Source: Perkinsus chesapeaki ATCC PRA-425 (Eukaryota; Protista; Perkinsozoa). Taken from it: a DNA stretch of 40,535 bases. Where the stretch lies: positions 1-40,535 of the forward strand of contig JAAPAO010000311.1 in the NCBI GenBank assembly GCA_013115145.1, in the 5' to 3' direction. The position numbers and the translations under genes were made by a program. Shown here piece after piece: positions 7,081 to 28,561 of the stretch; position 1 is the stretch's first letter; every line of letters starts with the position of its first letter. The notes below the pieces were generated by a model, which saw nothing but the letters and a program-made list of their open reading frames with translations, had not been told where the DNA came from and did not search any database.

Positions 7081-9050
7081 CCCGGATACTATGTCCTCGG
7101 CATTTTCCTCAGGCGCCTTCCGACAGGCTACTCCGAGAGCTTGGGAACAAATGATTCTTGGAAGGAGAAGAAGTTCGAATCTTTTGTTGATCACTCGAAA
7201 GGTAACCCAATTATTGTTGTATAATCCATTATTATGGGGACTGCGTTAGTCCGCTCAAAGAAAGTCCGCCTGACTGTCCGAGCCACACTCGGCGCTGTAG
7301 TTAACAAAGATTTCTTTCTATCACAGAAGTTCTCGAATAATACCATCATAGTATTCATCATCAGGCAAAGGAGGGAAAACTTTCGCGCAGTACTACCTGG
7401 AGAATAAACAGTACTACAACCCGCAGAGACCGGTAAGCCTGAAGCAGTCGAGCTAAGTTTGAGGTTCTCTTCAGCAGTTCAATTAGTTGTGATCAACTAT
7501 TACACCCATTTCAGATGCTATTTCTCGGAGTTAACGCCATGAGCCCGCTACCTGCTTCTCCACAGGTCGAAGAAATGGCGGACGCTGCTAAGGCATTTGG
7601 CGCATGGATGATCATCTTAGAGAGAAGGTCATTCCTTCTCACATCGTCGCTCCTCACTTTTTCGATCACTTATCACAGATATATCGGTAAAAGTCTACCT
7701 ACGAATGAGTATTCTGTGGCCACCTTGACAAAGTTTTTCACAGAGCAACAAACAGTTGAAGATGTGGCCCTGTTCGGTGAGAAGATGAAAAATGAAATTC
7801 CAGGACTGAAGATAATTCTCTTTGGGTGCAGCTCGGGAGGGGTAGGCTCCATCAACCATTTAGCATTCAAGCCTTTCCCATTTCAGACAACTGCAGCGTT
7901 GGCTCGAAAGTATCACCCAAATATCTTCGACGGGGCTGTTGTGTCTTCAGCCGTATTCAAGTTCAAACTTGAGTTTCAGGAGTACGTAAATGGCTAGTCT
8001 ATATATTACGTGTATTTTCAAGGTATGTCGAAGTCATTGCTGAAGATTTAAAGAATCCGAGACTGGAAGGCAGCAGTGAATGCCTGACTGCTGTAATTGC
8101 TTTCATTGCTTGGTCATTAGCATTTACTTCTTCTAGATCACTGCAGCCCATGCGAAGATTGGCGAGATGTTCGGCTCGAAGGAAGGGCGCCAGCAGCTTG
8201 AGACGATGTTCGGATTGGTATCAGGGGACTTGGATGACCCTGCAGTTCGGACAGACTTGTCAGCTATGTTTTGATTTCTTGCCAGAAAGGTGTTAATCTG
8301 TCAGCTCCTACCTTGGGCAACTTCTCGGTATCAATTTGCAGTATAACGATCCACAATGCAAAGATGACTACTGCAACATCGAAAAGATCTGCAAGAGGTT
8401 CGCTGAAGGAACGTAAGTACTCTAGTAGAGTAACTCTACACGGACACTTAGTCTGTGGCACTCTAGGGCCCGCAATGTAACAACTGTATTATTCCTGCTC
8501 AGGGAGTCGCCTCTGATTAAGCTAATCAATGTCTACGCCACTAACATGGATTACCCATATGGGGAGTCGTTGGCCACGTCTTTGCGGGAACTTGTCAACT
8601 TGTCCGCCTTTGTTCCATATTGTGTGGCACTTTTGATGCTCATTTAGGTTAAAAAATGAGAAGAGTGCAGGTAAACAGAGGATGTTACACTTCCGAATCT
8701 GTTCTGGACGAGCGCTCTTCATGCCTTGTGTATCGGGTTCATGCCCTTTCTTTACTGGAAAGGAATATGACTGGGTGGAATTTGGGCTGTGGTTGTGTCG
8801 GGAGGGCCTGGGGATCAAGAAAGAAGATGTACAACGCATGGGAGTCTTCTGGCAGGAGAACGTCATGACTCATGACTCATGAGGGATTTTACAACTTAGA
8901 TACTGAAGGGTATCGCAGATTTCCAAGCGTACGTTGGGGATTTTCGCGGCGTCACCCACGTACTGTCGATAAATGGTGATGCTGATCCATGGTATCCAGC
9001 ATCGATAACTCAGGGAGGACACGGACCCGATGTGGAGATGGTGAGATAAC
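7081..9050 (+). CDS. Serine peptidase family S28 (prolylcarboxypeptidase/thymus-specific serine protease-like); multi-exon, possibly degenerate
   Basis: Exon translations match the S28 pattern: KKFESFVDH; TFAQYYLENKQYYNP; LE(R)RYIGKSLPT; FFTEQQTVEDVALF; KIILFGCSSGG (nucleophile elbow); ALARKYHPNIFDGAVVSSA; INLQYNDP; VLSINGDADPWY. The start exon and the final exon with the catalytic His could not be resolved. Confidence 0.75.
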
Positions 9051-12022: not shown

Positions 12023-12208
12023 TGTATTTATTGTTTATATAACCAGTTTATTAAGGTAAATGCTTTTATTGTTTATATAACCAACTTATTAAGGTAAATG
12101 CATTTATTGTTTATATAACCAACTTATTAAGGTAAATGCTTTTATTGTTTATATAACCAGTTTATTAAGGTAAATGTATTTATTGTTTATATAACCAACT
12201 TATTAAGG
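12023..12208. repeat. 38-bp minisatellite, about 5 copies
   Basis: Unit TTTATTGTTTATATAACCA(GT/AC)TTATTAAGGTAAATG(CT/CA/TA); starts at 12027 and recurs every 38 nt, with the fifth copy at 12179. Confidence 0.95.
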
Positions 12209-12408
12209 TTTCTCGGTAAAACGAATTATTACTCCCTTTTACAATAGTTTATGTCGGTTTTTCCAGTCTTTTTCTTCGCACGAATTCATCCAGGAAAAGC
12301 AGGGTACTACAATTACATGTCATAAAACGGGTATTGGATTTTTTCAATAAAAATACGTTTTTTGGATTTGGGAAGGCGCACTGGGGAATAATCAAAGTAT
12401 CCTTTCGC

Positions 12409-15400
12409 ATGGTTTCAGGCCGAGTAAGCGTCACTGCGCCACAAAATTATCCAGTTCGTAATCGTCCGCCGTTGCATCCCAGCACACCTAGGCGTTCAGC
12501 TGGCAGTCCGAGGTGAGTGAATTTCGGAAAAAAATTCGGAAAATTTTCGGAAATTTCGCATGGAATTTTTTTAATGAAGGATTGTAGTATGGCTGAGATT
12601 TAAACGAATAGTATAATTGCCGAGATTCGATCATACCGTCTTGTATGCGGTGGAGCCGAAGAATGGGGGAAATTCTGGGGAAAATGGGGAAAATTCTGGG
12701 AAAAATGGGGAAAATTCTGGGAAAAATGGGGAAAATTCTGGGAAAAATTTGGGGAAAAATCAGGAAAAATGTGCAGAAGGCAGGAGAATCAGCGAAAAAC
12801 TTATTTGGGGTAAATTGTTGGAATTTCCCGGTACGTCGGACATCGATGACATGCTGGATAATGTCTCTGAGGAAATAACAAAAAATTTCCTGTGATATTT
12901 TTTCAGGTCATCCGTGAGATCGTTTAGTATGGGGAGTGGGAGTAATGAAGTGAATCAAACGGGGAAACGATCGGTCTCTCTGGGATGGGAAGGACCTCCT
13001 GTTAGTGATGATGGTAATACTGGTCCAATATTAGTATAATATAGATTATAGTATATGGTATAAATATATATAATATATAATATTGTACAAAAGGGTTGTT
13101 ATAATTGGTATTTTTACGGGAGATGGAACTCGGCACAATGCGCACAATCCTCAGGGGTTTGGTGAGGCTGAGATGAGAAGGATCCTCATCTGTCAAAACA
13201 TTCATTTTTTTCTATTTTTGAGGGTACGAAAGTGTTGTGGTAATTTATGCTTTTTGATGGGGACGAGACGCTCGACGGGAAAAATTTAATCGTTTTTTCC
13301 CATATTTTTGTCTTTGCTGGGTAATAATTGTTCATTGTGCAGTAAAATTGGAATATTTTTCCCTTTTCTGATTTTTTTGATCCTCGGTTGTTTTCATTTC
13401 CCACTGGATAGTAATCTGTTTAAGAATCCCGGTACGAAAACACATTCGAAAGGATTAGACTTCACTCCCCGATGGCCGAGCGAAAAGGGAAATGTCGACA
13501 GGGGCGATGGGATCTCGATATTATACCGATAGTTATCGACTTTGAATTTCGAGCAATATTATGTAGTACAGGCTTTCTTGATGTTAGATTGTTGAAAAAT
13601 GGAAGATTAATTAAGGAATTGAAAAATTATAAGAAATGATTTGAAACACGGAGCCACCGAATGGTGGTGTGAACCGAAGGGTGAACCGAACACGGTTCAT
13701 GACCGTGTTCACAGATCACCATCGTGACGGTGGTGATCTGTGAACAGCTCATCTTAAAATATTCATAACACTACAGAGGTTAGATTGAGTGAGCTTGACT
13801 GAGTCAAATTGAGCGGCATTTTCTGTGTAAGTCATAAAAGTAGACAAAATATTTGTGTACAATATTAAAAACGGGTTTCGGGTTCCCGAAACCCGTTTCT
13901 AATACTTTATGTAATTCAGCGGCGAAGTCAGATACTAATCGAGGAGGTAGTCCCAGCTCAGCAAGACAGGTCAGTGGTGGTCGACGAGCTTCGGTGGAGC
14001 AATCGCCGAGATCTACAAGAGGATATAGGTTTAAATCCCTCGAAGGTGAGCGTGGAAATAATGGGATCGAGTTTTTCCGTTATATAATCGATTGGATGGA
14101 ATAACATTTTACTAGTGTAAAAATAAATTATATAATCGATTGGTTGGAATAACATTTTACTAGTGTAAAAATAAATTATATAATCGATTGGATGGAGTGA
14201 AATTTTACTTGTTTATTTAGTATATTTCCCCACCCGAGGATTGAACTCGGGACCTTTCGGTATTTAGATGCGAAATCGCCCGAACCGGAAATCAAGCCGT
14301 CGACGACATTCGGGGACCAATCCGAGGATCCACTGGAAAGAACGATGAGACTGCAACGAAGGTAGATGAAACGGTTAATCGATTTGATGGAACATTTTTT
14401 CCTGTTAAAAAGTCAGCGTTGTAATATCTGTTGGTTTCCTTCCTCGGTTGAGCTCTTCAAGTTTTACCCTTCAGTGCTGACATGGAAAATTGGAATTCTT
14501 GAAAAACCCGATTTTTTTCCGAAAATTTTTATGCTTGCATATTTAGTCGACCAGATGCATATTATTTGTCCAGAAATGTGACCCTTTCATGATTGTTAAT
14601 TTACTGTGAATTCTACGGAGAAATGAAAGCCAAATTTTCGCGTATTTCCGTTTTCGTTGGTATTAAGTAATACAAAGCCGAAATAAGGCCTTTGAGCTTT
14701 TACCTTTCAACGTAGGTTCCTCTCGATTCGGATCCGCACGCATGCACAAGCTTTTTTCGTTCTTACTGTCAGATATCTTTATAGTAAGATTCCCGTCTCT
14801 GGTCCAAGTGTTTTTCCAGCTCTTATAAGGATACTTGCCACGGCTATCTTCCTGGTATGGAGATAAGGCCCGAGTTCGATCCCGGCACATGTTGTTTTTC
14901 CGTCAGTTTCTGGCTGTATTTGTAAGTGCTAGTATTTGGACTGGTTCAATGCAATGGATGGGGAACCTCACCTGCATGTATAGAGAATCGGAAGGAACGA
15001 TTTCATCGAATCCGGTAAGATAATGAAAAATTATGTGGTCAGTGGTATTCATCTGAGCTCAGGTCTTCGCCACTTGGACAGCCTCGAAGCCGCGATCGGC
15101 GGTAGATGGTAAAAGATGCCGCCTCTGGTTCCAACTCGACCCGAGGTTTCCTGTTTCATCGACCCTCTACGACCAACTAGGATACTACACTGCCCGAACT
15201 GGGCTGCTGTGCGGTGAGGTTGAGAAATCTTGCAATCTTGCTGAATCTTGCATTTCCTTAAGGTTCATTTAGCAGCGATATTTTCGGAGGCATGTGTGAT
15301 GGTGGGCGCTGTTTGACGTGTATTGCGGACAGGCCGTGCTATGGTACAGTGGAGACACGTCAGATAGAGGACGAAGAGGTTGTCTGGGTTGATAACCAGT

Positions 15401-16510
15401 AAGTGACGCGGGTTCAATCCCGGGGGAGGGCATTTTATTAAGGAGAAAATGAAATGCATAACTGCATCTTTTGGGCTTTACGTCAGGAAATTTATAAAAG
15501 AAGTAATATTAAGTCACGTACAGTAGCATAAAAAGACATGTAGTAGTATACAGTATTAATTTTGATACGCAAGACTAGGAGTAATTGGTAGAGTGAAGTA
15601 CCGCTGTTATTTCAGATTTCCGGCCATCCCCTCCGGTGGCACTTTGGCGAACGTGCTCGTCTTTCTCGATGACCAGACAGTTATTCAGATGAGTAACACT
15701 GCGGTTGGTCTGATGCCGATATGTTCTTTGGACGGGCAGGTGAGTGGCGCTGCTTTTAAAAGGTCCCGAGTTCGATTCCCGGCCGGAGCTGTTATGATAT
15801 CAAGATCAATTTTCAATAGGCGCGGTTTTTGCTCTGGAATGGTCATAAAATATCTGCAATAGATTTTCGATGGATTACGCACTCGCTAGATTTTTTGAGC
15901 GGAGCGAAGCGTTTTTTATTCATCGTTTTTAGGTCACTCCGGGACATAGTATAGTAATTCTGGGCCTCTTCATTGGAAGTGTTATTCTTGTCGTACTTGT
16001 TGCTGCGAGAGAGATAAGAGAATGGGTGAGATGTCGGGTGCCGGGATCGAACCAGGGACCTTTGGGTTGTTAGTTTAAAGTGAGGAAGAGTAACCATGAG
16101 GACACTGTAGATGATGCTGTGATGGTGGCGCATATTGGAGAGGCTGTTGAGAGCATGAAGAGGGAATCTGAAACGGCTGCTAGGTGGGAATAAATAGTAT
16201 TTCGGTAAACGACCATTTCATCGAATGTTTTAAAATGTATGGGCTCGCCTAGGGTTTGAAAATATCATTTGCTGATAAGAATGAGCACTTTGCAATGGAG
16301 ATACACCTCCGTCATTTATACCGAGACTGTTTACGGATCTTATTAGGCTGCACAACGCCCCAGGCTCAATCTTTTGTGAAATATTATTTCCCTCGAAAAT
16401 TTTTTCGTGGGTGGCAGCACCTGTCCCTTCACCCGGCGGTAGCCAGTATAGGAGTATAGCTGCAGTCGGTCGTTAAACGCAGAGCCCTAGGAAGTGAAGA
16501 GGCGAAATAA
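12409..16510 (+). CDS. Hypothetical multi-exon membrane protein with two predicted TM segments flanking a Cys-rich loop; gene ends approximate
   Basis: Phase-consistent GT-AG joins give LIRILATAIFL|FLAVFVSASIWTGSMQWMGNLTC; RILHCPNWAAV; SDIFGGMCDGGRCLTCIADRPC...VWVDNQ|FPAIPSGGTLANVLVFLDDQ...SLDGQ|VTPGHSIVILGLFIGSVILVVLVAAREIREW|FKVRKSN. The N-terminus is low-complexity and Ser/Pro/Arg-rich. No family recognised. Confidence 0.6.
12665..12770. repeat. 21-bp G-run tandem repeat (GGGGAAAATTCTGGGAAAAAT), about 4 copies, intronic
   Basis: Repeat is directly visible. It explains the spurious ORFs GENSGKN... and MGKILGK... Confidence 0.9.
14080..14196. repeat. 48-bp tandem repeat, about 2.4 copies, intronic
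   Basis: Unit TTATATAATCGATTGG(A/T)TGGAATAACATTTTACTAGTGTAAAAATAAA starts at 14080, 14128 and 14176. Confidence 0.95.
14226..14261 (-). other. Intronic tRNA 3'-end-like fragment A (T-arm + acceptor strand)
   Basis: Minus strand ACCGAAAGGTC-CCGAG-TTCAATC-CTCGG-GTGGGGA-A: perfect 5-bp T-stem, B-box loop, 7-nt acceptor strand plus discriminator. It lies just upstream of the AG at 14266-14267. Confidence 0.75.
14865..14888 (+). other. Intronic tRNA T-arm-like fragment B
   Basis: AAGGCCCGAGTTCGATCCCGGCAC inside the 52-nt intron 14855-14906. Confidence 0.65.
15405..15432 (+). other. Intronic tRNA 3'-end-like fragment C
   Basis: GACGCGGGTTCAATCCCGGGGGAGGGCA followed by TTTT, directly after the GTAAGT donor at 15399. 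Confidence 0.6.
15758..15790 (+). other. Intronic tRNA 3'-end-like fragment D
   Basis: AAAAGGTC-CCGAG-TTCGATT-CCCGG-CCGGAGC-T in the intron 15740-15932. Confidence 0.7.
16032..16068 (-). other. Intronic tRNA 3'-end-like fragment E
   Basis: Minus strand AACCCAAAGGTC-CCTGG-TTCGATC-CCGGC-ACCCGAC-A fills 37 of the 48 nt of intron 16026-16073. Confidence 0.75.
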
Positions 16511-16797
16511 TTTGAGATAATTTCTTGATTGAAATTCTCCTAGATGTGGGATGGATTCCGTCTGTCTGGCCCAGCACATGCTGCTCCTCTGGGTCGTCTG
16601 CCTTGTGCAGTATTATGAACACCGCAAGGATCCGATAATCAATCAAGTCTATTGGATGTACAGTTTGTGACATAGGGACAGGAAAAATGGAGCAGGATAT
16701 GTTATGTTAGTGAAACAGGAAACAGATGTTATCATTACACTTCTGTGGAAAATTGTAGCCCATCGGGGGAAGTGACCGTTTGCATGCATGATGGCAT

Positions 16798-19700
16798 TTG
16801 AGTGAATCACCAGTTAGGACTGCACAGGTGAATTCCCGCTTCCTCAGGCACTATACAGATCCTCATGATGATGCGGCAGGAAGGCGCGCGGTAGGCTGGC
16901 ACGATAATTTAGCTAATTCGCTCCGAATTCGAAAAATTTTCAGGACTCGGCGTCTCAGCGAAGTATCAGATCGGGCTCGGATAGAAGGTGATTCTTGCGC
17001 GCCGCGAAATTGTAGGAAATATTTCTGCTTTAGAGCATCTACATCAAGTCAAGGAGCACCCGAGGGCTCATCTGGTGAGTTTAGACTTGCGGGGAAAAAT
17101 TCCGAAATGTTGCGGAAAAATTTTGAAAATTTTTGCCTTAGATTCACTTTCGAGTAGTTGGAGACTCAAGTTGGAGAATATGAAGGTGAGCGTTGAGAAA
17201 GTGCAAGATTTGGCAAGATTTCGAGATTTTGCAGATCGCGGCAGCTACAAGAGAGAAGGTGGCAATTTTCCGGGGAATCATGGGCATGGTGGCGCGAATT
17301 ATAATGTAAGGAATCTTAGCTTGGCCCGTGAAAGATACTTGAGAGGTGATGTGGCAGATACTTCGTTGTTCACATGGTTGCCATCCTGTTGATATTTGCT
17401 CTTTCACCATCTCAATTTTTCCCTTATTCATGGTGGAGTAAGTCTTGGGGGAATTTAATAATTTCGTGGCGCGTGACGAAATTCGTTCGAGATAATTGAG
17501 GCTTTTCTTCATTTAAGTCAAATATACTCTCTCTAGATCCCACTGCGAACAATTCGCGGAAATTTTTCCCCCGTTCATTTGAAAAACTAGATTTTCCCCT
17601 CTGCGCGATCAGTATGATATTTGCCCGTTTCACCTTACCAAAATTTTCCCAGTTTTTTTGTAATTTTTCACTCCAGGTCTCTTCGACGGTTTCATCAGTG
17701 CCGGCACGGTGAGCTACTGGTCATTCACGGATCTCCTTGTAATGGGCGACATTTTCATATCTATCATACTCCTTCTGCCATCAATTTGCCGTCCACAATG
17801 GTGAGGAGTATCTTTAGGTTGATGCGTGCATTACTGTTGTGTAGGTTCTCGCTTGGAAATGGTGATGCTACTAAGACTCGTCGAGGTAACTTTTACCGGA
17901 AAAATTTCTCTGATTTTTCCTCTGCGTTTATTAATGATAATAATACGGCTCTGCTGTTACTGGAAAAAAAAATTCGAAGTGAAATACGTAGATCACACTT
18001 GAGGCCCGAGTGAATTCTATTTTTTTATTCTTAACTTTCCTCTTTTTTGGCATTTTTTAGCAAAAGTTTGGTGGTGATTTGATGCGCAGGTCGGAGATTA
18101 TCAGACTGATGTTCGCTAGGAATATGATGACACTTGAAGTGTTTCTGTGTGAAGCCCAGAGAGATGTTATTAACGTTAACAAAACGACGTTTCGTTTTGC
18201 TCTTTTGCGAGGGAAATTTTTTCCTGGAAAAATTTCGGATTCGCGCGGCAGTTTTTTGGAGGGAAAATTTTTACCTTGGGGGACTTTTTTGTTCCTTCAG
18301 GAGAGATACGCCAGAACATGATGGCGAACTCCGAAGCCTGTGTGGTAATTTTGGTGCGAAGTGGAACATGCGCCAACTTCACTAAAAGGAGGAGATTGAT
18401 GAATCTTGCACAGAAGTAAGATACGCCAGAGTCTCCAAGTTAACCTATTTTGAATCTTTCAAGGTGCGAAGATCTCTTCCCGGCCTCGAAGTCAGGACAG
18501 TCTAAAGTCTTCGTTGTCGATTATGGCAATGGTGCGACGCCGAAGGATGACTGTTGCAATATGCTGCGAGTGAGTCACGCCACTTTGCTCTCTTGAGAGT
18601 TTGAACACTCGAAATTGCTCTATTGAAATTCTTGAGCAAGCATGCTCTATTTGGAATTACGCTTGCTCAAAACTCTTTTCACTTGGAGATTGCACAGAAT
18701 AAACTTTAGTGTCAAGCGGACTCAGTCAGTGATGTTTGAAATCCGTTTTATCTAGATATTTTTTAGAACTCAACTCTACTGTTAACGAGTGTCTGATAGA
18801 AATGATTCACTTCAAATGAACGTTTGGAAATTTGTCGTTTCTTTTACGGAAAAATAAGGAAAAATTGTGGAGAGACGTTTTTCCATCTTTGTTTCTTAAA
18901 GTTTGCCTCAAGACGAACGTCACGAAATTCCGCGGCAAACATTTTTCGTTGAATCCAGTCCGACCTGATGAAATAGAATAATTTGTAACTAGAATGTATA
19001 TTTCCCCAACGAGATGATATACAGTGCGAACCAAACCGTTATGCAAATTCGTTTTTTGGTTTTTCGTTTTTTTTGGTATAACTTTTTTAATTTTACGACT
19101 CAGAACATGAAACTTGGAAGATGACATGATGGTAACAGTTAAAAATAAATGTTGTAATATCATGACCGTTTCTCCACCCAATTCGATTATTTTGGCGAGC
19201 GAGATTTTTTCTGGCTGCGCAGCCGACCCAAACCGTGTAGGTTCTGAGTTGAGGTATCCCTCTCATGAGTTGAAGTAGCCCTCTCTTAGGAGGTTTGCTC
19301 CGAGCCGCCGAATTTCCCCCTAGTGGGTATTGTAACGTTTTAATTTTGAAAATACCATAAGGAGAATCTAGAACATGGCACTTAATCGATCAACCGTTTC
19401 ATGCATATCTACTGATATCTTCCAGCGCGCCATAAAATATGTACTTGTTTGTGTTTGTCTCCCACGATTTTGCCTTTCAGCGAACGGTGAGCTTCAACAT
19501 CAACTACGCCTACCTTCCCGAAGATAATCCCGTGGTGGCACTCCACTGGACGAACAAGGTATGGATTCCGGCGGTGGCGAAGCGACATAGCTTGGAGAAA
19601 GGAGAAGGGTCGAGGAGAGCATCGTAAGCTGGAAAATATCTTTTACGGAAACTTTCGGGCCGGAAAAATTTCTTTCTGGTTGATATTGCCGATTCGCGCC

Positions 19701-22621
19701 GGGGTTGGCTCAAATTTGACGACTTGAAGTCGACGCTCGACGGATTCTAACTTTAACTTTGTGGTCGGAATTATGAGGGGGAATTCGGATAGGACTTCGC
19801 GCAAATAAGCATGCTATCTCATTTGAGTCGACAAAATTTTTAGTGGATTATATTTTCATAATTTTTTCTTGTCAAGTATACGAAACTGATTTTTATCAAT
19901 TGTTTCCTTATTATCATATCCCATCCCTCTTCTCGGATCTTTTCATCGACCATCTCGATATGATGCAATCTTATTTATTCCACCGTTCATTCGGCAAGGG
20001 ACAGATGACACAATAGTCTAGTTAGGCGCTCAGGGGCGAAAGAGCTATTTTGGTAGAGCTATCAAGAATGAGCCCAAACTCTAACGTATATAGTGGTACG
20101 AAAAGTTTTCGAATGATTTTAAATGATTTTACTCCTCTTTTAAAAAAAGAGGCGATATATATTATATTTGGTAATTTATTACCAATAAACGGTTGAGCTT
20201 TCTGCGAGTACTAAGCCCCTCCTGATCATAGGATATTGCTTAGGTATCGCTACGCATTGGTTATAGATGATATTGATGGTGTTAATGAATACACGCTTCC
20301 GACTGTATTTGACAGTCAATGTCGAGTAAGTTAACCTATTGAGTATCTTGCACGCTTGACCTCTGGATACCTCAGGAACATAACGAGGCTGGTATTCAGC
20401 TAGTAGTTCTGCCACCGGTTGCTATGGAGGATCCTCAGACCACCAAGACGGCGTGGATGATGGACGACTTTTTGATCAAGCTGGAAAATATGTGAGAAAT
20501 TTCCCGAAATTTCCCGAAATTTTCTGCCATTTCCAGAGATTCCTCGTAGGGTAAGATTCCTCAGTGCTACGAATATTCCTGCGAATTTCATATTCATGAT
20601 TTCTCACAAAATTGTCAGTTCTTTCTCGGGAAATTTCCCGAGCGCGTCAAGTTTCTGTAATATTTCCGGAAATTTTTCTTTTTTGCAGTCGCGGTATGGC
20701 ACTCCAAAGCATGACTGGTTCAATGATAACAACACCGACAAAATCGATATGTCTCTGGGATCGAATTAGCCTTTACGAGGCTGCGGCTGAAGCCACTGGA
20801 CCACAGAGAGTAAGGATCAGTAACACAATTTCTCGCGCGCCCAATAATTGCATGGCGAGTGGGTGAAGTATACGGAATGTTGTCGAGGGGAAAAATTATC
20901 GAAAATCTTTGTTAGATTTTCTGGCTTTTCCGTGGAGAAATTTGCAGGCTGAATGGAACGGCTCATTTTATATTCGGTGAAGTGAAAAACTGTGCGCTTT
21001 TTCCTCAAGGAGCGGATTCTCGTATAGGGGCATGAAAAGCAATGAAAAAAATTGGGAAAGAATTCAGAATTTATTTTTTCCCAATTTTGTTCACTGAAGT
21101 TAAAATTCAGTGTCTTCCATTATTTTGTTTGGGATTTGTGAATCAGTATCGGTCTGCTTCGCTGAAATTTATTGTAGATGAGATCGTGTCCCTTTTGTTC
21201 CAGGTGAGATGGTCCTCAGAGATGGATCAATGTTTGGCTTTAAAACAGCTTCGTCAAGTGGAGTGTCGGACTGCGGTCGCAGGGCAATCGGTAAGTGGAT
21301 ACTGCCGAAATTTCACGGATTTTTTATTTTTCGTTAATTTTTGATTCTTTGTGGCATTTAATTTTTCCCGCAAGATGTCACGTTTTCTTTTTGGGATTCG
21401 AGGTTTTTCCGGAATTTTTCAGTGGGAAAGATACAGTGGGAATTTGGGTAATTTTGCGAGTGTCTGTGACAGGTGACGGTTACCACAAATATGGATCTTT
21501 TCGCGGTCTACTGCGCAGCTTGGGCGCTACAAGGAAGGCTACTTTGGGAACTACTCAGTTTCAGATGTGCAACTATTACGAGGTAGGACGAACGTTTTAG
21601 TGCGGGTAAATTATTCCGGGTTATGGTTTCAATTTTTAGATTCCTGGCGAAGTGGTGGATTCTGTTCGACCAGTTCATTCCTAAGTTCTTCACGATAATG
21701 AGGTGAGCTATTTGTGCCACATTTGATTTTTATGCCTCCACTTCCTCATTGCATTTATATATTATTTTTATGCCTCCACTTCCTCATTACATTTATATAT
21801 TATTTTTATGCCTCCACTTCCTCATTACATTTATCTTTGTCATTAGATAAATTCATCGTGTCATCGATTTATATTTGTTATCATTTATCTTATCATTTAT
21901 ATTTTGTCATACCTTTATCCTTGTCAGGCCCCTGATGCTGGTTGTTGTATTCTTACGCTCTCCTTTCGATACAGTATTCATCATTCTGGTAAGTCCCTCC
22001 TTTCGAACTCGTTATCAGTTTCATGTCGACTTCAATAGATTGTAATACAGCTAGTCTGAATGAATCAGAAATTGAAAAAATGCCGCAGATTTCAGAATTT
22101 GGATTCCCCGCAAGAATGAGCTTCACACCTCCGTGTATGCCCAGAGGTTTCTGATCGATTCATACCGACTTCATCTTCACATTCTATCGAAAATCTATTC
22201 GGCCCGGCGCGGAGCAATGTTCTGACCAGCAGGTTAATAGTGCGCAATTTTTTTTGGAAAGTTCTAAGTTTCATCCTCGTTTTTGCTATTAATATTGTGT
22301 AAATTGTCCCGTGAATTGTTTTTCCTGAACCCTACTTCATCGAGATTCTTATCGAAATTGTGAACAGCGTAGATATGCAGGGAAAAAATCTTGAAAGACT
22401 TCCGCGTTGGTAAATCCTCCAAGTTGAGAAATCTTCTACCGAAACCCTTATTCTCAGGTTTATATTTTGCTGTTGGTGCCAGCGAGTATATTTTTGGTGA
22501 TGTCATCTCTTCGGTACAGCACCGACTTGACCAGGAATTGGTCCAAGTAAGAATTATTAACCTACAAGTTGTAGGCTACAACTGGCGGTGTTATGCAGTG
22601 CGTCGTGAGGAATCTTTATAG
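16798..22621 (+). CDS. Hypothetical multi-exon protein(s) with a hydrophobic segment and a possible TIR-like alpha/beta domain; may be more than one gene
   Basis: Phase-consistent exons: IRQNMMANSEACVVILVRSG...LAQ|KCEDLF...KVFVVDY...CCNMLR (18306-18569) | RTVSFNINYAYLPEDNPVVALHWTNKVW (19481-19623) | ILLRYRYALVIDDIDG | EHNEAGIQLVVLPPV | IRGMALQ. The 3' exons and gene boundaries are ambiguous. Confidence 0.45.
21731..21834. repeat. 38-bp minisatellite, about 2.7 copies, intronic
   Basis: Unit TATGCCTCCACTTCCTCATT(G/A)CATTTATATATTATTTT starts at 21731, 21769 and 21807. Confidence 0.95.
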
Positions 22622-22709
22622 TGCGTCGTGTGGAATCTTTGTAGTGCGTCGTGAGAAATCTTACTAGTGTGTCGTGAGAAATCTTACTAGTGTGCCGCGG
22701 AAAATCTTT
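22597..22709. repeat. 23-bp tandem repeat, 5 diverging copies
   Basis: Unit approximately AGTGCGTCGTGAGGAATCTTTAT starts at 22597, 22620, 22643, 22666 and 22689. Confidence 0.9.
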
Positions 22710-22728
22710 CTAATGTAGACTATTTTTC

Positions 22729-25518
22729 ATGGATTCTTGTGGGGACAGCAATTATGGAAGAAATCAGGGATTATTAAAATTAAAAAAAAGTTGTTTTGCG
22801 CCTCACAAACGGAGGGTGCGAAGCTCCACTGGAAGTTATACTGGCTACTCATAGCAATTTTTCACATCGGAGCTCTGGCAATGGGGAGCGTACAGAAATC
22901 AAGCTCTAATACGAGCAAATGAAATTGGCAAGAGCGCAGGGATTTATATCGTCTCGTGGGGATTAGTTTTTCCGTGAAGTGTTTTTGATGCGGAGGTGAA
23001 ATGGAAATTTTGATAGGAAATAGGTTCCTAGTAGATTCGGACCTCAGGGACGGTTCACTCTGGCATTTTTTCAGGCTACGTCTCCTTATGATTCTTCCTG
23101 GCATAAATATGATGCGGGAGATATTATATGGTTACTCATCGCTGTACCACGCAATTTTCACCTACAGGCCATCGTATCCGTCCTTGGACGCTATGTCGAA
23201 GAAGGTAGGTTTGGATATCTATCTTTGCCATGAATTCTAAGTTTACTATTCGCTCGGAATTATGGGGTTTTGTATGTGATTGACCTCGCTTTGAGGTACC
23301 CTTCGAAGGAGGTTGACACTTTTTTTGCGAAGATTTCTTATGTATATTTTTCCTAGTGCGGAGGAGATACAATATGAAGTTTAGTAGGAAATATGTTATT
23401 GGTGAGAGAAGAAATATCTGATGCATTTTTTGATACATTCGATGGGAATATCTGAGGAAGATAACACATGTTCTCTCAGGTATGTGGCAACGGCTTGCCG
23501 CCTCTTCCGAGCGATGGTGGAAATAGTGTTAACTGGTTCACTGTGTGGTGCTCGGCGACGAGCGGCCAATATAGCACAGAGCCCCGAAAGGAGTTCGAAG
23601 GTTCCCCGTACGAAGGAGGACACTCACCGAGATGGTGAAAATACGCAATTTTTTATTGCTTTTCTGAGTATTTAAAGTCTATTAACTACACCTTATTAAA
23701 ATTGAAACCGAGATGGCAAACGTATCAGGATGTCAGACCAGCTTCAGCTGGCTTATCTGGTAGAAATGGTATGTTGAGTTGATTGAGTGTTGAGAAAAAG
23801 GGCGAATGTGGTGGCATAAAGATAATATATAAATGTAAAGAGGTGGTATAAAGATAGTTTATAAATGTAAAGAGGTGGTATAAAGATAGTTTATAAATGT
23901 AAAGAGGTGGTATAAAGATAATATATAAATGTAAATAGGTGGTATAAAGATAGTTTATAAATGTAAATAGGTGGTATAAAGATAGTTTATAAATGTAAAT
24001 AGGTGGTATNNNNNNNNNNNNNNNNNNNNNNNNNNNNNNNNNNNNNNNNNNNNNNNNNNNNNNNNNNNNNNNNNNNNNNNNNNNNNNNNNNNNNNNNNNN
24101 NNNNNNNNNAAATGTAAATAGGTGGTATAAAGATAGTTTATAAATGTAAATAGGTGGTATAAAGATAGTTTATAAATGTAAATAGGTGGTATAAAGATAG
24201 TTTATAAATGTAAATAGGTGGTATAAAGATAGTTTATAAATGTAAATAGGTGGATTTCCATAAGATGGCGGATTCCTTTCCGTTCGACTGTCTCATGGAG
24301 ATTTCAAGGCGAGGAGAGATGAATAAGATGAGAAAAAGCTTCGATAAAAAATGTGGTCAGATTTCCAATTTGAAACGAGTAAGAGACAGGGAGCAATCTA
24401 GGCTCGCGGAAATATGACTCCTCGGCATCACCGAGTCGAGAAAAAAATGTGTTCTTAATGCGGAGGTACGGCACAAAGCTCGTTAGATTACACGTTACTG
24501 GATCAAAAGAAAACATCATATGCATTGCTTCTGGGGACATCACTTATGCTTGTATGCTCTTAGGCGCCCAACGAGTCCTTCAACGCGTGGCTTTTCGCTG
24601 CCCTGGCAGAGCCAGACTGGCCTTTGGCCACCGAGGAGAAGGAACATCTCTTTGTGGAGGTCTCAGAGGAAGGTAAATTTGAGCAATAGAGACTTTCAGG
24701 CAGCGATTCAATATACAGTACTCGGCGACAGTATTGGAGTGTGCACCGCCCTTCCTGAATTTAGCTCTCGAATCACGGAATCCACATGAAAAAATACAAT
24801 CTTCGGAGCAGGAAAGGTTTACCGACGGATGGCTCCAAATCTGGTTCACCTCCTAATTTACACTTGAAAATTCACAGAATTAAGTCATTTTTTTCCGCAG
24901 AAATATGTCAGGAAATGTCCTGTGACAGTATCGTCCTATTGCCCTTGCCCTGAGCCTACCAGATAGCTATCGTAAGCACCAGCGAGTGACATGTGCCTGG
25001 CACATGGCGTAAGCTGCGGTCGGCGAAGCTGCTTTCTGACGAGCTCACGCTCATTCAAAACGAACGCAGATGGCTATTATATATTTGCAGAAACAATTCG
25101 GTCTTCTCATAATGAGAAATTCTCATTGAGAATAACTACTTCGAGTCAGCCGATACCAACCGTTGGTGCTTCGCTGCTAACTACATCCTTACGGAAACTA
25201 AGGACGGTGACCACCCTGAGGCGTCCCGAGTGTCCGACGTCGAAGGCAGAGAAGCAGTTCTACAGTACCTCATAGCGGTAGGGTTTTGTAAGCTTTGGTA
25301 TACAGACCAGGGAACAAAGCACGCTTGGATTGGCGGCGAATTTTCAGCATTCAAGAATATGCTCAACTTGGCAATTCATCGAGGCGGCTGAGGTATCTCT
25401 TCTTATCAAAGATGCGACCATGCTGCGCCATGCGTCATGCCACTGTTTCATACTTGACTGGACAACCGATGAAGAGAAATGGTCGGTCGTGCTGGCCAGA
25501 TGTGTGAATAGAGGGTAA
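22729..25518 (+). CDS. Hypothetical multi-exon protein; boundaries approximate
   Basis: Exon-like segments flanked by AG/GT: VPSRFGPQGRFTLAFFQATSPYDSSWHKYDAGDIIWLLIAVPRNFHLQAIVSVLGRYVEE; APNESFNAWLFAALAEPDWPLATEEKEHLFVEVSEE; QRFNIQYSATVLECAPPFLNL; CFILDWTTDEEKWSVVLARCVNRG*. No family recognised. Confidence 0.35.
23808..24253. repeat. 32-bp minisatellite array interrupted by a scaffold gap
   Basis: Unit ATAAATGTAAA(T/G)AGGTGGTATAAAGATAGTTT on both sides of the N run. True length is unknown. Confidence 0.95.
24010..24109. other. Assembly gap (100 N)
   Basis: Run of exactly 100 N within the 32-bp array. Confidence 1.
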
Positions 25519-25860
25519 ACCGAGCTTGTACTCCGACACAGACTCTGTGTCACAGAGTCTCTGGGATTTCATTTATCTACCTGACGGCACATTCTAGTTG
25601 ATAGAGATGGTTAATCATCAATGATGCACTCATTGTCGTGCGAATCTGACGAGTTTATACGAGGGGTTCCCTCTCGCACTGGCCCCTTGTTAGAGAGAAG
25701 AAGTCTCACGGCGGCCGCCAGTGCACTTGCTTCGATCGGTGTTGTGTTGGACATCGCTACCCTTAGTTCAATCCTATCGTTAAACTCCTGGGTAATGTTT
25801 TTGAGAAATGAGCGAATAATAAACTCAACGAACTTGTATTAAAAATTTGTAAATTTGCAA

Positions 25861-28561
25861 ATGCTGTACACTGAAACTGTCCCCATTTCAGTGCCAAAAG
25901 TGTCTCCATTATGCAAGTATCTCGAACGGAGCCACGCGGAGATAGCGGACGGTTCTCGAAATGGAGATAGTAAGTGCCCATCAAAAATTGTTCCTTTTCG
26001 AGGCGCGTGGCTATTCAGGTTCTTCATCTGGTGTGAATGTGATCTCCATTGAACTGGAGCGGATGCTCCGTCAGGATTTCCGTCGCGCCAGAAAGGATAT
26101 CTTGGAAAAATGGCCGGCTGTCGTTGGAGATTTTCTCGACGAGCGACATTGGGCGGCTAGAGTTGAAAGAACGTGCCAGAAGAAGGGCCGAGTGAAGTAA
26201 GGAAAAAAGGATGGTTCTCGACGGCTCTCTCTGTCGAATTACGCGTGTCGGTCACGCACGCACGCGCCTATTAGTTGTCACGTGGCCCAGAGATCGACAA
26301 ATCATAACAACTTTTGTAGATGGATATGAGGCATGCTGAATCTCTCAGTGCGCTGGAAGGCAATGTCGTCAGTCTTGCTCATCTAAGCTCTACAATTCAG
26401 CTAGGGCCGAAATTGGCCGCCGGCCAGTGGACGGAAAATTACTCGAATTTTCCATATCTTGCCAACCGTTGGCAGCCAATGTATGTAGAGAACCACATGT
26501 ATACTATTAAAGGCAAATCTCCTCAATATGTACGTAGGTACAGTCTGGTGTTGCCCACGGAGGAGCTTCCGAAAGAGCTGGAGGATTTCGTTATTAGACA
26601 ACCGCTGGGTCATGAGATTCTAGAGGAATACGATGAAAGACTCCGGGAAAGATACGCTAGAGGTCGACTTGGTAAGATACTTTTCAGCTCGCTTCAACGA
26701 CCTAAGAATAAATTTACTAGCATAGCTCACACACTATTGATATATCTTTCATATTTTATGTTTGCAACTATCAAACTTTTTATTGAATCTCCGGACTTGC
26801 AATGCTCTTGAACTTTCCAGGGGGTACGTTGTCATCGAGATCGAGAAATCCTTGGTCTACTAGAGAGGGGCATTTTCCCGTTATTCTCAGATCCCACCTC
26901 CAGCATTGGTGTGTCCGAGCGTATCTGGCTTTTGCTTCATCGGTATTATACTCTCTTCGGCACAAAGAGCGGTGAGGGTCGCGGATGGCAACTGGGAACT
27001 CCGACGGAAGCGATGGAGTTGATGACGGTAAGTTCACGGCGTCTTTCTCACCGAACCGCTTCGGAGAGTGGCATTCTCAGAATGCATTTCTTCAGGCTAC
27101 GAGACACAAAAAATCGACCGTGCTTTTGTGGAAATTACCAAATTTCAGCCCACTTATTCGAGTGACGCTGTCCAACGGCATCTTTGCGCCACGCCACGCC
27201 GCGCAGCGCGCGCAATGTCTCCTTCAAACAGTAATAGAAAATCAGTATAATTTAATCAGAGATTTGAACCGTCTGGCGCAGAGGGATCTGAACCGTGGAT
27301 ACCTTGGAGATACTATTTACTGGAATGTATGTTGCCTGGCCGTTTTATCGACCACTTGATGACCATCATGCTACTTTTTGCGTATCCTGCCGAGAGGCGA
27401 CGCGCACATTCGAAAAGATTACGTTTAGAAGAATGAAAATTGCAAGGGTGAGTGTAGAGTGCGTTCGCATCCGATGGGCAAGTTGCTAAAAAGCTAATTG
27501 AAGCGAGCTTATATATGTATGAGATATTAACTTCTCAGCGACTCGCCCACCAGATACGAACGCATCACTGTATATCAGTGAAGATCGGTTTGAGTTGGCT
27601 CTGCAATTAACTGCGCATTGTAACACTACGCAGTCAGCGTCTGGTCTGGCTACTTTTTCCAAGCGGAATGATTCACCAAAGCGCCTTTCGGTCGCCAGAA
27701 GACGCTATCATGAATCATTTCATTCACCAAAATCTGTAGAATCTAGGATTTACTGCCTTTCAGGACCGATTCAGAGTTTCCCACGAGTGCTTCGCATCTC
27801 CCTTGAACGCGACGTTATCATCATTTTGCTCGCTTTTTTACGACACGGATAGTTTTTTCGGAAGCGTCGGCTCGTTTTTCCGACTACCCCTGGATGACTT
27901 TCCGGCAGCATGCGAAATTGGTCCTCCCTATGAGCCCGGTTTGATGCTCAAAGCAGTTCTGAAGGTGGAGAAAATACTTGCGCGTGCGTGCAAAACTTTT
28001 GTGTTCGTTGTCCCGGATTGGGATAACTGTGAGAGCATTGATTCTATCAAACAGAGCAAATATAATATAGGCAGTGTGAGCCTGGATAAAGAAGAGCACC
28101 GTTACAAGAATGGCTTCCAACACATGGTGAGTTTTCGAGTGATTGGTGCAGTCGTAGCGACTTCGTGAGACACTGCTGGCTTTCAAATTTCACTCAGTGG
28201 TACTACCACACTCGGACGCAGGGATTCTACCTTTGTGGTAGAATCCCTGCGAGACTGGGAAACACTATAGACCTCCAACTCTGTCCCAATGAAGGTTGCT
28301 GGCGCTCTTTACCGTTTCGACGGCGCCCTGCGAACCGCGAAGTGTGATCGTCAAGAGCTTCGCGCCTGCGGAACCGCGCCGCCGTTTGACGAATTGCGCA
28401 TGGCCATCGTCTTGTGTCCTCCTCAGGTATTGAAAGCTTCCCTGAAACATTCGATGTGCGAAACGCCCACTCTTATCGCCTGGTTAAGTAGCTCCGAAAC
28501 TGTTCGAGTGTCCGAGGAGAACAAAGAGAGAATGAAGAGCTCCTGGCGACCTGTCAACTGA
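25861..28561 (+). CDS. PCIF1: PCIF1/CAPAM-like cap-specific adenosine N6-methyltransferase homologue; multi-exon, start uncertain
   Basis: RIWLLLHRYYTLFGTKSGEGRGWQLGTP...MT| (donor 27028, acceptor 27763) |DRFRVSHECFASPLNATLSSFCSLFYDTDSFFGSVGSFF...CEIGPPYEPGLM...FVFVVPDW...HRYKNGFQHM| (28127-28426) |VLKAS...LIAWLSS...ERMKSSWRPVN*. This matches remembered PCIF1 motifs LLRRY, ECFASPLN, CSAFPDTDGYFGS, FEANPPF, FIVFIPEW and HEYRSGSQH. Confidence 0.88.

What the first reader, a model, noticed from the sequence alone, without database searches (positions are those of the whole stretch)
14226..16073. Five introns of one gene each carry a tRNA 3'-end fragment (T-arm/B-box + acceptor strand), in both orientations
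Seen: within about 1.85 kb, five introns of the 12.4-16.5 kb gene (ending 14267; 14855-14906; starting 15399; 15740-15932; 16026-16073) contain a module of variable region (AAAGGTC), T-arm with GTTCRAT, and a roughly 7-nt acceptor-like strand with discriminator. Two are antisense and three are sense. A and D share AAAGGTCCCGAGTTC exactly; B and E share GTTCGATCCCGGCAC exactly. The acceptor-like tails differ (GTGGGGA, GGAGGGC, CCGGAGC, ACCCGAC). No D-arm or A-box is attached and there is no CCA. In E the module makes up 37 of 48 intron nucleotides. I did not see the module in introns of the other genes here. Established: GTTCRANNC is the TFIIIC B-box, and isolated B-boxes (ETC/COC sites in yeasts) can act as chromatin boundaries. 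Inference: this may be a tRNA-derived mini-element that seeds or colonises introns (introner- or SINE-like), a TFIIIC insulator cluster, or a source of split-tRNA halves or tRF-like RNAs.
Basis: partly seen in the sequence, partly recalled or inferred. Interest (0 to 1): 0.8.

Follow-up and report, generated by a model that had tools for sequence, protein, structure and literature searches.

The report
tRNA-gene tails inside Perkinsus introns
Five introns of one gene in the shellfish parasite Perkinsus chesapeaki are built around the worn-down back end of a tRNA gene, and the docking motif for the tRNA transcription factor TFIIIC has survived in the matching introns of other Perkinsus species, so these are old, probably still-used elements and not fresh insertions.

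Summary
The window is a whole contig of Perkinsus chesapeaki. Five modules of 33-42 nt (variable loop, T-arm with the B-box motif GTTCRAT, acceptor-like strand) lie at 14226-16073. They are the only copies in 40.5 kb (4 hits against 0.01 expected). All five sit in GT-AG introns of one gene: four match the deposited annotation exactly, and the fifth is placed by the P. olseni orthologue.

They are not tRNAs. There is no A-box, no 5' half, and only module A still folds as a T-arm.

They are not recent insertions. Every host intron exists in P. olseni. Four-fold degenerate sites are saturated (30% identity), yet the B-box is kept 30/33 in introns B, C and E, against 47/87 for the rest of those introns. 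Intron E is 48 nt in three species. Retention is uneven: B and C have decayed in the third species, and A has decayed in P. olseni.

Best reading: these are ancient tRNA-gene tails that form intron cores, with the B-box kept as a DNA-level docking site, probably for TFIIIC. The TFIIIC step is inferred and was not tested.

This scan has noted the same class several times on other contigs of this genome. I found no published description.

The parts
12415..16183 (+). 5' part of the host gene. It has many short exons, encodes a membrane protein with no Pfam domain in this part, and continues downstream of 16184.
   Evidence: Exon blocks of P0001 are mapped. The upstream exons 12415-12518 and 13980-14050 match P. 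olseni exons.
14046..14267 (+). Intron A (222 nt, GTGAGC...TTTAG). It holds a 48-nt x3 tandem repeat and module A at its 3' end.
   Evidence: The P. olseni intron 7192-7271 is at the same codon.
14226..14267 (-). Module A, antisense to the gene. It has an anticodon-loop-like end, AAAGGTC, a perfect 6-bp T-arm and the acceptor-like strand GTGGGGA. The B-box lies at 14238-14248. Its CT end supplies the AG of the 3' splice site.
   Evidence: the only module that folds as a T-arm. The P. olseni counterpart keeps only TGAAGTCGGGA.
14724..14759 (+). Possible sixth, decayed module (TTCGGATCC, GCAC, T-run) near the 3' end of intron 14362-14772.
   Evidence: Seen by eye. The profile does not detect it, so this part is weak.
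14855..14906 (+). Intron B (52 nt). It consists of a 5' splice site, module B (14862-14895, B-box 14872-14882), a T-run and CAG.
   Evidence: Annotated intron. The orthologues are 50 nt in both P. olseni and the third species. The B-box is 9/11 in P. olseni and decayed in the third species.
15399..15615 (+). Intron C (217 nt). Module C (15404-15436, B-box 15410-15420) lies 5 nt after the intron start and is followed at once by TTTT.
   Evidence: The P. olseni intron (84 nt) has the module at the same offset, B-box 10/11, also followed by TTTT. The third species has a 50-nt intron without it.
15740..15932 (+). Intron D (193 nt). Module D (15757-15792, B-box 15768-15778) lies near the 5' splice site.
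   Evidence: Rfam tRNA alignment covers model positions 23-71 at 11.3 bits. The P. olseni intron has GGTTCGATC(C/T) about 40 nt further in, intact in haplotype L005.
16026..16073 (+). Intron E (48 nt). It is GTGAGA plus module E (16032-16073, antisense), which corresponds to tRNA positions 32-73. The B-box lies at 16043-16054.
   Evidence: the tRNA model aligns over positions 31-71. The intron is 48 nt in all three species with B-box 11/11, 10/11 and 10/11. If the intron were retained, an in-frame stop would be read at 16071-16073.

Best explanation
The five modules are relics of the 3' part of tRNA genes, running from the anticodon-loop or variable-loop side to the discriminator. In two cases the terminator T-run is also present. 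Each relic forms the core of a spliceosomal intron or one end of it.

The relics are old. Their host introns, and at least three or four of the modules themselves, predate the split of P. chesapeaki and P. olseni. They no longer act as tRNA or as tRNA halves.

What has been kept is the B-box (G53 T54 T55 C56 R57 A58 .. C61) plus a few bases 3' of it. It is kept in both orientations relative to the host gene and without a paired T-stem. This points to recognition as double-stranded DNA. The most likely reader is TFIIIC, as at A-box-less 'extra TFIIIC' sites. If so, this gene carries a cluster of 5-6 such sites in 1.85 kb.

Shown here: tRNA-like make-up, intron location, positional orthology, and preferential retention of the B-box.

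Inferred: TFIIIC binding (I put this step alone at about 40%) and any effect on chromatin or on transcription of the host gene.

The modules also supply splicing signals. The antisense CT of the anticodon loop gives the 3' AG, and antisense AAAGG gives a pyrimidine stretch. In the sense copies the terminator T-run serves as the polypyrimidine tract.
For: 1. Non-random and clustered. There are 4 hits against 0.01 expected, and no other copy in the window.

2. tRNA geometry. The Rfam tRNA model aligns E end to end over model positions 31-71 and D over 23-71. TTTT directly follows the acceptor-like strand in C in both P. chesapeaki and P. olseni, and a T-run follows in B in both species.

3. Intronic. 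Annotated introns match exactly. Orthologous exons align at 65% protein identity, while intron lengths differ between species: 217/84/50 nt for C and 193/421/360 nt for D.

4. Ancient and constrained. Four-fold site identity is 69/227 = 30%, which is saturated. The B-box is kept 30/33 between P. chesapeaki and P. olseni in B, C and E, against 47/87 for the rest of those introns (Fisher p = 8e-5). Over all three species the figures are 59/77 against 102/189 (p = 4e-4). In C and E the substitutions fall only at the degenerate positions 52, 57 (A/G) and 59.

5. In a blind search for the best shared 11-mer, the module is the top element in introns A, B, C and E.

6. No RNA-structure signal. Four of the five modules fold no better than shuffles, and T-stem pairs are not maintained between species.

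7. Within P. olseni, two haplotypes at about 94% identity show 0/50 changes across the module-C end of the intron, against about 10/45 in the rest of that intron.
Against: - No binding, expression or RNA data exist here.
- The tRNA model scores are only 10-11 bits (E 3-6 even in 50-nt searches). Module A gave no tRNA match at all.
- Retention is patchy. B and C have lost the B-box in the third species, A has lost it in P. olseni, and B in P. olseni has G53 changed to C.
- Between P. olseni haplotypes the B-box is not visibly protected. C61 is changed in one intron and polymorphic in intron D, about 3 changes in 66 bases against about 6% background.
- Other short introns of this gene also carry conserved, unrelated 11-mers such as ATCTTGC and CGGAAAAATTT. 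Conservation inside small introns is therefore not unique to B-boxes.
- A cluster of TFIIIC sites inside a Pol II transcription unit would be expected to hinder elongation.
Confidence: 0.55

Rival explanations
1. The module acts in the pre-mRNA, not in DNA. It could be a splicing signal of very short introns (branch-site region, pyrimidine tract), or a T-loop-like target for a tRNA enzyme such as the Pus4/TruB pseudouridine synthase, which recognises GUUCNANNC hairpins.
For: In the 48-52-nt introns B and E, and at the 3' end of A, the B-box lies 21-32 nt upstream of the 3' splice site, where branch points sit. Intron E is constrained over its whole length, with 52-64% identity outside the B-box against 30% at neutral sites. 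Modules supply the 3' AG and the pyrimidine stretches. Other conserved motifs exist in neighbouring small introns.
Against: The B-box is conserved in both orientations, and these give different RNAs. In C and D it sits next to the 5' splice site, 150-200 nt from the 3' end, and in C it is still conserved. The motif does not match the yTnAy branch sites seen in module-free introns here, such as TTAAC and TTGAC. The hairpin that Pus4-type enzymes need is lost in four of five modules.
Confidence: 0.13
2. The modules are neutral relics with no present function. The apparent conservation reflects repeated gene conversion from real tRNA genes, which are themselves conserved, or chance survival among many decaying copies.
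For: Decay is under way in several lineages: B and C in the third species, A in P. olseni, and the C61 changes between P. olseni haplotypes. In P. chesapeaki, modules A, D and E share AAAGGTCCC outside the B-box, whereas E of the other two species differs there. This could reflect homogenisation.
Against: Neutral sites are saturated (30% identity). Under no constraint, 30/33 retained B-box bases has probability of about 6e-13. Conversion tracts would have to act on targets of only 30-40 nt. Conversion would also restore the T-stem and acceptor, yet these are scrambled while the B-box is kept.
Confidence: 0.15
3. This is an active or recent tRNA-derived mobile element (introner- or SINE-like) that is now colonising or creating introns.
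For: The module occurs in both orientations, as for DNA-transposon introners. A and D share a 15-mer exactly and have no intact counterpart at the same place in P. olseni. Modules abut splice sites: random placement would give p of about 0.01, 0.07 and 0.23 for A, C and D. P. olseni has modules in two introns where P. chesapeaki has none.
Against: Similarity between copies stops after about 30 nt, and I found no terminal repeats or target duplications. All host introns are shared with P. olseni, so no intron gain is seen. B, C and E are positional orthologues across saturated divergence. A residue of module A is present in P. olseni, and a B-box is present in the P. olseni D intron.
Confidence: 0.1
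4. The modules are halves of split or permuted tRNA genes, or dedicated sources of tRNA-fragment-like small RNAs.
For: The modules run from the anticodon loop to the discriminator, and in B and C they are followed by a T-run that resembles a Pol III terminator.
Against: There are no 5' halves or A-boxes. T-stems are broken. No complementary acceptor strands lie nearby. Two of the five modules are antisense to the only known transcript.
Confidence: 0.03

Closest known systems
Extra-TFIIIC (ETC) sites of budding yeast, chromosome-organising clamp (COC) sites of fission yeast, and human ETC sites (from my own knowledge of the field)
   Same: They are isolated B-box consensus sites with no A-box and no Pol III gene. 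They are conserved between related species and are sometimes clustered, as at the fission-yeast boundary repeats.
   Different: Known ETC/COC sites are mostly intergenic or near promoters. These lie inside spliceosomal introns of a protein-coding gene, are still flanked by recognisable tRNA-gene remains, and help to make up the intron. TFIIIC occupancy has not been tested here.
Introner elements (Micromonas, Aureococcus, dinoflagellates, Amoebophrya; PMC7789003, read)
   Same: They are recurring sequence families that constitute introns, occur in either orientation, and are found in the same broad lineage (Myzozoa).
   Different: Introners are many near-identical copies with direct and inverted repeats, and they are strain-specific. 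Here only a 25-30-nt core is shared, there are no terminal repeats, and the introns are shared across deeply diverged species.
tRNA-derived SINEs (for example MIR, B2, ID)
   Same: They derive from tRNA, retain a B-box, and often lie in introns.
   Different: SINEs keep the 5' tRNA head with both A and B boxes, plus a body and a tail. These are only the 3' 33-42 nt, with no head, body or tail.
tRNA pseudogenes and tRNA genes hosted in introns
   Same: They are decayed tRNA genes in non-coding DNA.
   Different: The truncated end coincides with the exon boundary. The relic supplies splice signals. One sub-motif is kept across saturated divergence.

Membership tests
Functional tRNA gene | Full cloverleaf detected by ARAGORN or by Rfam RF00005 at gathering score | tested here: not met
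   Only the two tRNA-Leu(TAA) genes at 35 and 37.5 kb are called. Truncated alignments of E and D score 10.5 and 11.3 bits against a gathering score of 29.
Functional tRNA gene | A-box / D-arm 30-60 nt upstream of the B-box | tested here: not met
   The A-box pattern gives 5 hits against 1.95 expected. None is placed correctly, and the one near C lies in a conserved coding exon 68 nt away.
ETC/COC-type TFIIIC site | B-box consensus GGTTCGANNCC with no associated Pol III gene | tested here: met
   All five modules keep G53 T54 T55 C56 R57 A58 and C61. No tRNA gene is present at these sites.
ETC/COC-type TFIIIC site | Conservation of the B-box between related species beyond the flanking sequence | tested here: met
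   The B-box is kept 30/33 against 47/87 for the flanks between P. chesapeaki and P. olseni (p = 8e-5). It is lost in the third species for B and C.
ETC/COC-type TFIIIC site | TFIIIC occupancy without Pol III | not testable with these tools
   This needs ChIP or CUT&Tag in Perkinsus.
Introner element | Many near-identical full-length copies | tested here: not met
   Copies align only over about 30 nt, and mean column identity with flanks is 56%. There are five copies in the window, all in one gene.
Introner element | Terminal inverted repeats or target-site duplications at the intron ends | tested here: not met
   The repeat search finds only module-to-module matches. The junctions read show no duplication.
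Introner element | Lineage-specific intron presence (recent gain) | tested here: not met
   All host introns are present at the same codons in P. olseni, and B to E also in the third species.
tRNA-derived SINE | 5' tRNA-related head with A and B boxes, followed by a body and a 3' tail | tested here: not met
   Only the 3' part of the tRNA is present, and sequence beyond the acceptor-like strand is unrelated between copies.
Split or permuted tRNA gene | A matching 5' half with a complementary acceptor strand, and a foldable T-arm | tested here: not met
   No 5' halves were found. Four of five modules fold no better than shuffles.

The most novel reading that the evidence does not exclude
Perkinsus keeps a genome-wide class of intron-resident TFIIIC docking sites that began as tRNA-gene tails. 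These tails either created the introns (tRNA-tail introners whose anticodon loop and terminator supplied the splice signals) or were retained in them. Clusters such as the 5-6 sites in this gene would then tie the Pol III factor to the chromatin organisation or transcription of Pol II genes.
Probability: 0.3. Interest if true: 0.85.

Novelty: new variant of a known kind. Interest (0 to 1): 0.66.

Why it matters
If the B-boxes are bound by TFIIIC, this would be the first case I know of in which A-box-less TFIIIC sites are systematically embedded in spliceosomal introns and also serve as intron material. That would link three topics usually studied apart: the decay of tRNA genes, the origin and make-up of very short introns, and the non-Pol III roles of TFIIIC in genome organisation.

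The lineage, sister to dinoflagellates, has poorly understood gene regulation. The cross-species pattern (intron E kept in three species, others decaying) offers a ready natural experiment. P. marinus can be cultured, so the idea is directly testable.

Even on the minimal reading (old relics with a constrained core), it shows that a defined, recognisable DNA source makes up a measurable share of small introns. In this gene that share is 2 of 14 introns of 70 nt or less.

Tried and rejected
- Exhaustive GT-AG path search for open reading frames. It gave about 21,000 frame-consistent paths, so ORF continuity alone proves little. I relied on the deposited annotation and on cross-species exon conservation instead.
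- Transcript evidence. A search for spliced protein fragments covering exons around introns C to E found nothing.
- Rfam at relaxed threshold over 5.5 kb gave no tRNA hit. Truncated alignments appear only in 50-nt searches, at non-significant E-values, and module A gave none.
- Parent tRNA assignment. Only tRNA-Leu(TAA) genes are present in the DNA I could fetch, and the tools cannot scan the Perkinsus genome, so no parent could be named. From memory, AAAGGTCCC plus the CTAACAA loop of module E resembles tRNA-Val(AAC). This is a lead only.
- A-box / 5'-half search: nothing usable.
- TIR/TSD search: nothing.
- Identity of the third species (Logan run SRR12548988): not found in the literature.
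- Literature searches for Perkinsus with introner, tRNA-derived introns, or B-box/TFIIIC in introns found no description of this.
- Within-species polymorphism between P. olseni haplotypes: too few changes to test B-box constraint.
Full report
**Source.** The window is the whole 40,535-bp contig JAAPAO010000311.1 of assembly GCA_013115145.1. The JAAPAO prefix is used for Perkinsus chesapeaki in PMC11513098, and the annotated protein of this locus is named as P. chesapeaki.

- Reading 12.2-16.8 kb shows five modules: A 14226-14267 (antisense), B 14862-14895, C 15404-15436, D 15757-15792 (all sense) and E 16032-16073 (antisense).
- GTTCRATYCC occurs 4 times against 0.32 expected. Every hit lies in 14237-16062.
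- A profile built from the five copies finds nothing else in the window at E<1.
- The two exact shared strings are there: AAAGGTCCCGAGTTC in A and D, and GTTCGATCCCGGCAC in B and E.
- Similarity between copies ends after about 30 nt, and the flanks do not align.

**Are these introns?**
- No ORF longer than 98 codons exists in 12-17.5 kb, so any gene must be made of small exons.
- A phmmer search with one exon recovered the deposited protein P0001 (1276 aa, 100% identity) and an orthologous fragment.
- Mapping P0001 back onto the window gives 36 exon blocks. Its introns include exactly 14855-14906, 15399-15615, 15740-15932 and 16026-16073.
- The P. olseni orthologue P0004 (KAF4665833.1, 64% identity, locus L004) carries additional upstream exons that match window 12415-12518 and 13980-14050. 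It also has an intron between ...FKSLE and DA....
Intron A is 14046-14267. The annotated start exon at 14623-14667 lies inside the true intron 14362-14772.
- The gene does not stop at 16.5 kb. It splices on from 16184, as in the other species.
- Exons align at 65% protein identity. Intron lengths differ freely between species: 52/50/50 nt for B, 217/84/50 nt for C, 193/421/360 nt for D.
- Intron E would introduce an in-frame stop if it were retained.
- I could not obtain transcript evidence. My own search of GT-AG paths is too permissive to count as evidence.

**Are they tRNA-derived?** The case rests on motif and geometry, not on a significant model score.
- All five modules keep the T-loop / B-box invariants G53 T54 T55 C56 R57 A58 and C61.
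- A, D and E have the variable-loop string AAAGGTC.
- The Rfam tRNA model aligns E end to end over model positions 31-71. Intron E is therefore GTGAGA plus the antisense of tRNA positions 32-73, and the AG of the 3' splice site is the complement of C32-U33 (10.5 bits, E 6.3).
- D aligns over positions 23-71 (11.3 bits). A gave no tRNA match.
- In C, TTTT follows the acceptor-like strand directly in both P. chesapeaki and P. olseni. In B a T-run follows in both species.
- They are not tRNAs. No tRNA is called there and there is no A-box. Only A folds into a T-arm; the others fold no better than shuffles, with z between -0.6 and +0.5.

**Are they recent?** No.
- I fetched the P. olseni locus (L004; also a second haplotype, L005, about 94% identical) and a 10-kb Logan contig (L002, run SRR12548988). 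The Logan contig is collinear and about 70% identical to both, so it represents a third, unnamed species.
- Between P. chesapeaki and P. olseni, four-fold degenerate sites are 30% identical (69/227). That is saturation.
- Intron E is nevertheless 48 nt in all three species, with the B-box 11/11, 10/11 and 10/11. The one change is at the free position 59.
- Intron C of P. olseni has the module at the same offset from the 5' splice site with the B-box 10/11. The change is A/G at position 57.
- Intron B of P. olseni has 9/11, with G53 changed to C.
- Pooled over B, C and E, the B-box is 30/33 against 47/87 for the rest of the same introns (p = 8e-5). Over all three species it is 59/77 against 102/189 (p = 4e-4).
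- A blind search for the best shared 11-mer per orthologous intron pair returns the module in A, B, C and E.
- Intron D of P. olseni carries GGTTCGATC(C/T) about 40 nt further from the splice site. It is intact in haplotype L005.

**Limits of the conservation.**
- In the third species, B and C have lost the B-box. In P. olseni, A keeps only TGAAGTCGGGA.
- P. olseni has modules in two introns where P. chesapeaki has none.
- Between P. olseni haplotypes the module end of intron C is unchanged (0/50 against about 10/45 in the rest of that intron). However, C61 is changed in one other module and polymorphic in D.
- Several module-free small introns of this gene also hold conserved 11-mers.
- The elements are therefore constrained, but individually dispensable.

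**How it most likely works.**
- The retained piece is exactly the TFIIIC-binding B-box.
- It is retained in both orientations relative to the host transcript, next to the 5' splice site in long introns (C, D) as well as in minimal ones, and without maintained T-stem pairing. That pattern fits recognition of double-stranded DNA better than an RNA role.
- I therefore read the 14.2-16.1 kb stretch as a cluster of five, perhaps six, A-box-less B-box sites of tRNA-gene origin. They are likely bound by TFIIIC, as at yeast ETC/COC sites (comparison from my own knowledge).
- The TFIIIC step is inference, at about 40%.
- Independently, the relics contribute splice signals. In the long introns the truncated (anticodon-side) end abuts the exon boundary: distances are 0, 5 and 17 nt, for which random placement gives p of about 0.01, 0.07 and 0.23. 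This hints that the relic and the intron arose together, but I could not test it.

**Rivals.** The alternatives are an RNA-level splicing or T-loop-enzyme role, neutral relics kept similar by conversion, a still-mobile introner or SINE, and split-tRNA or tRF sources. They are weighed in the Rival explanations section. The last two are poorly supported.

**Novelty.** Searches of the paper library found no description. Earlier notes of this same scan describe the same class on other contigs of this genome. I used them as leads and re-tested their main claim here. It holds for E, for C and B in two species, and probably for D. It fails for B and C in the third species.

Noticed in passing
window 33564-37540: Tandem duplication of a 290-aa ORF of unknown function (98% amino-acid identity between copies). 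Each copy is followed about 450 nt downstream by a tRNA-Leu(TAA) gene (34987-35068 and 37458-37539). The 541-residue gene call over this stretch probably fuses the two copies.
   Followed up: partly
window 15214-15262, 17186-17234 and 20326-20375: A second intron sequence family. Intron 15214-15262 (three ATCTTGC repeats) is the 79% inverted complement of intron 17186-17234. The ATCTTGC core is conserved in the P. olseni orthologues of 15214-15262 and 20326-20375 despite saturated neutral divergence.
   Followed up: partly
window 14623-28561: The deposited P. chesapeaki gene model (1276 aa, named as the PCIF1-type methyltransferase) looks wrong at both ends. Its first exon lies in an intron of the true gene, which starts near 12.4 kb. 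It is also fused to the PCIF1 gene, which P. olseni annotates as a separate 416-aa gene.
   Followed up: partly
window 12023-12212, 12658-12784, 14080-14223: Three tandem repeat arrays in non-coding parts of the host gene region: 38 nt x5, 21 nt x4-6, and 48 nt x3 (the last inside intron A, just upstream of module A).
   Followed up: no
window 13706-13746 and 13858-13909: Two near-perfect palindromes (20-nt arms at 95% and 25-nt arms at 88%) in the long intron upstream of exon 13901-14045. The second gives a weak, sub-threshold match to a microRNA hairpin model.
   Followed up: no
L004 14000-14056 and about 17580-17630; L004 7368-7501: P. olseni has tRNA-tail modules (GGGTTCGAACCC, GGGTTCATTCCCC, AGGTTCGATCG) in introns whose P. 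chesapeaki counterparts lack them. One of these is a 57-nt intron orthologous to a 1359-nt intron of P. chesapeaki.
   Followed up: partly
window 16988-17033, 17075-17141, 18416-18463: Other small introns keep 10-11 of 11 bases with P. olseni in short motifs unrelated to tRNA: CTTGCGCGCCG, CGGAAAAATTT, and CAAGTTAACCT (the last a likely branch site).
   Followed up: no
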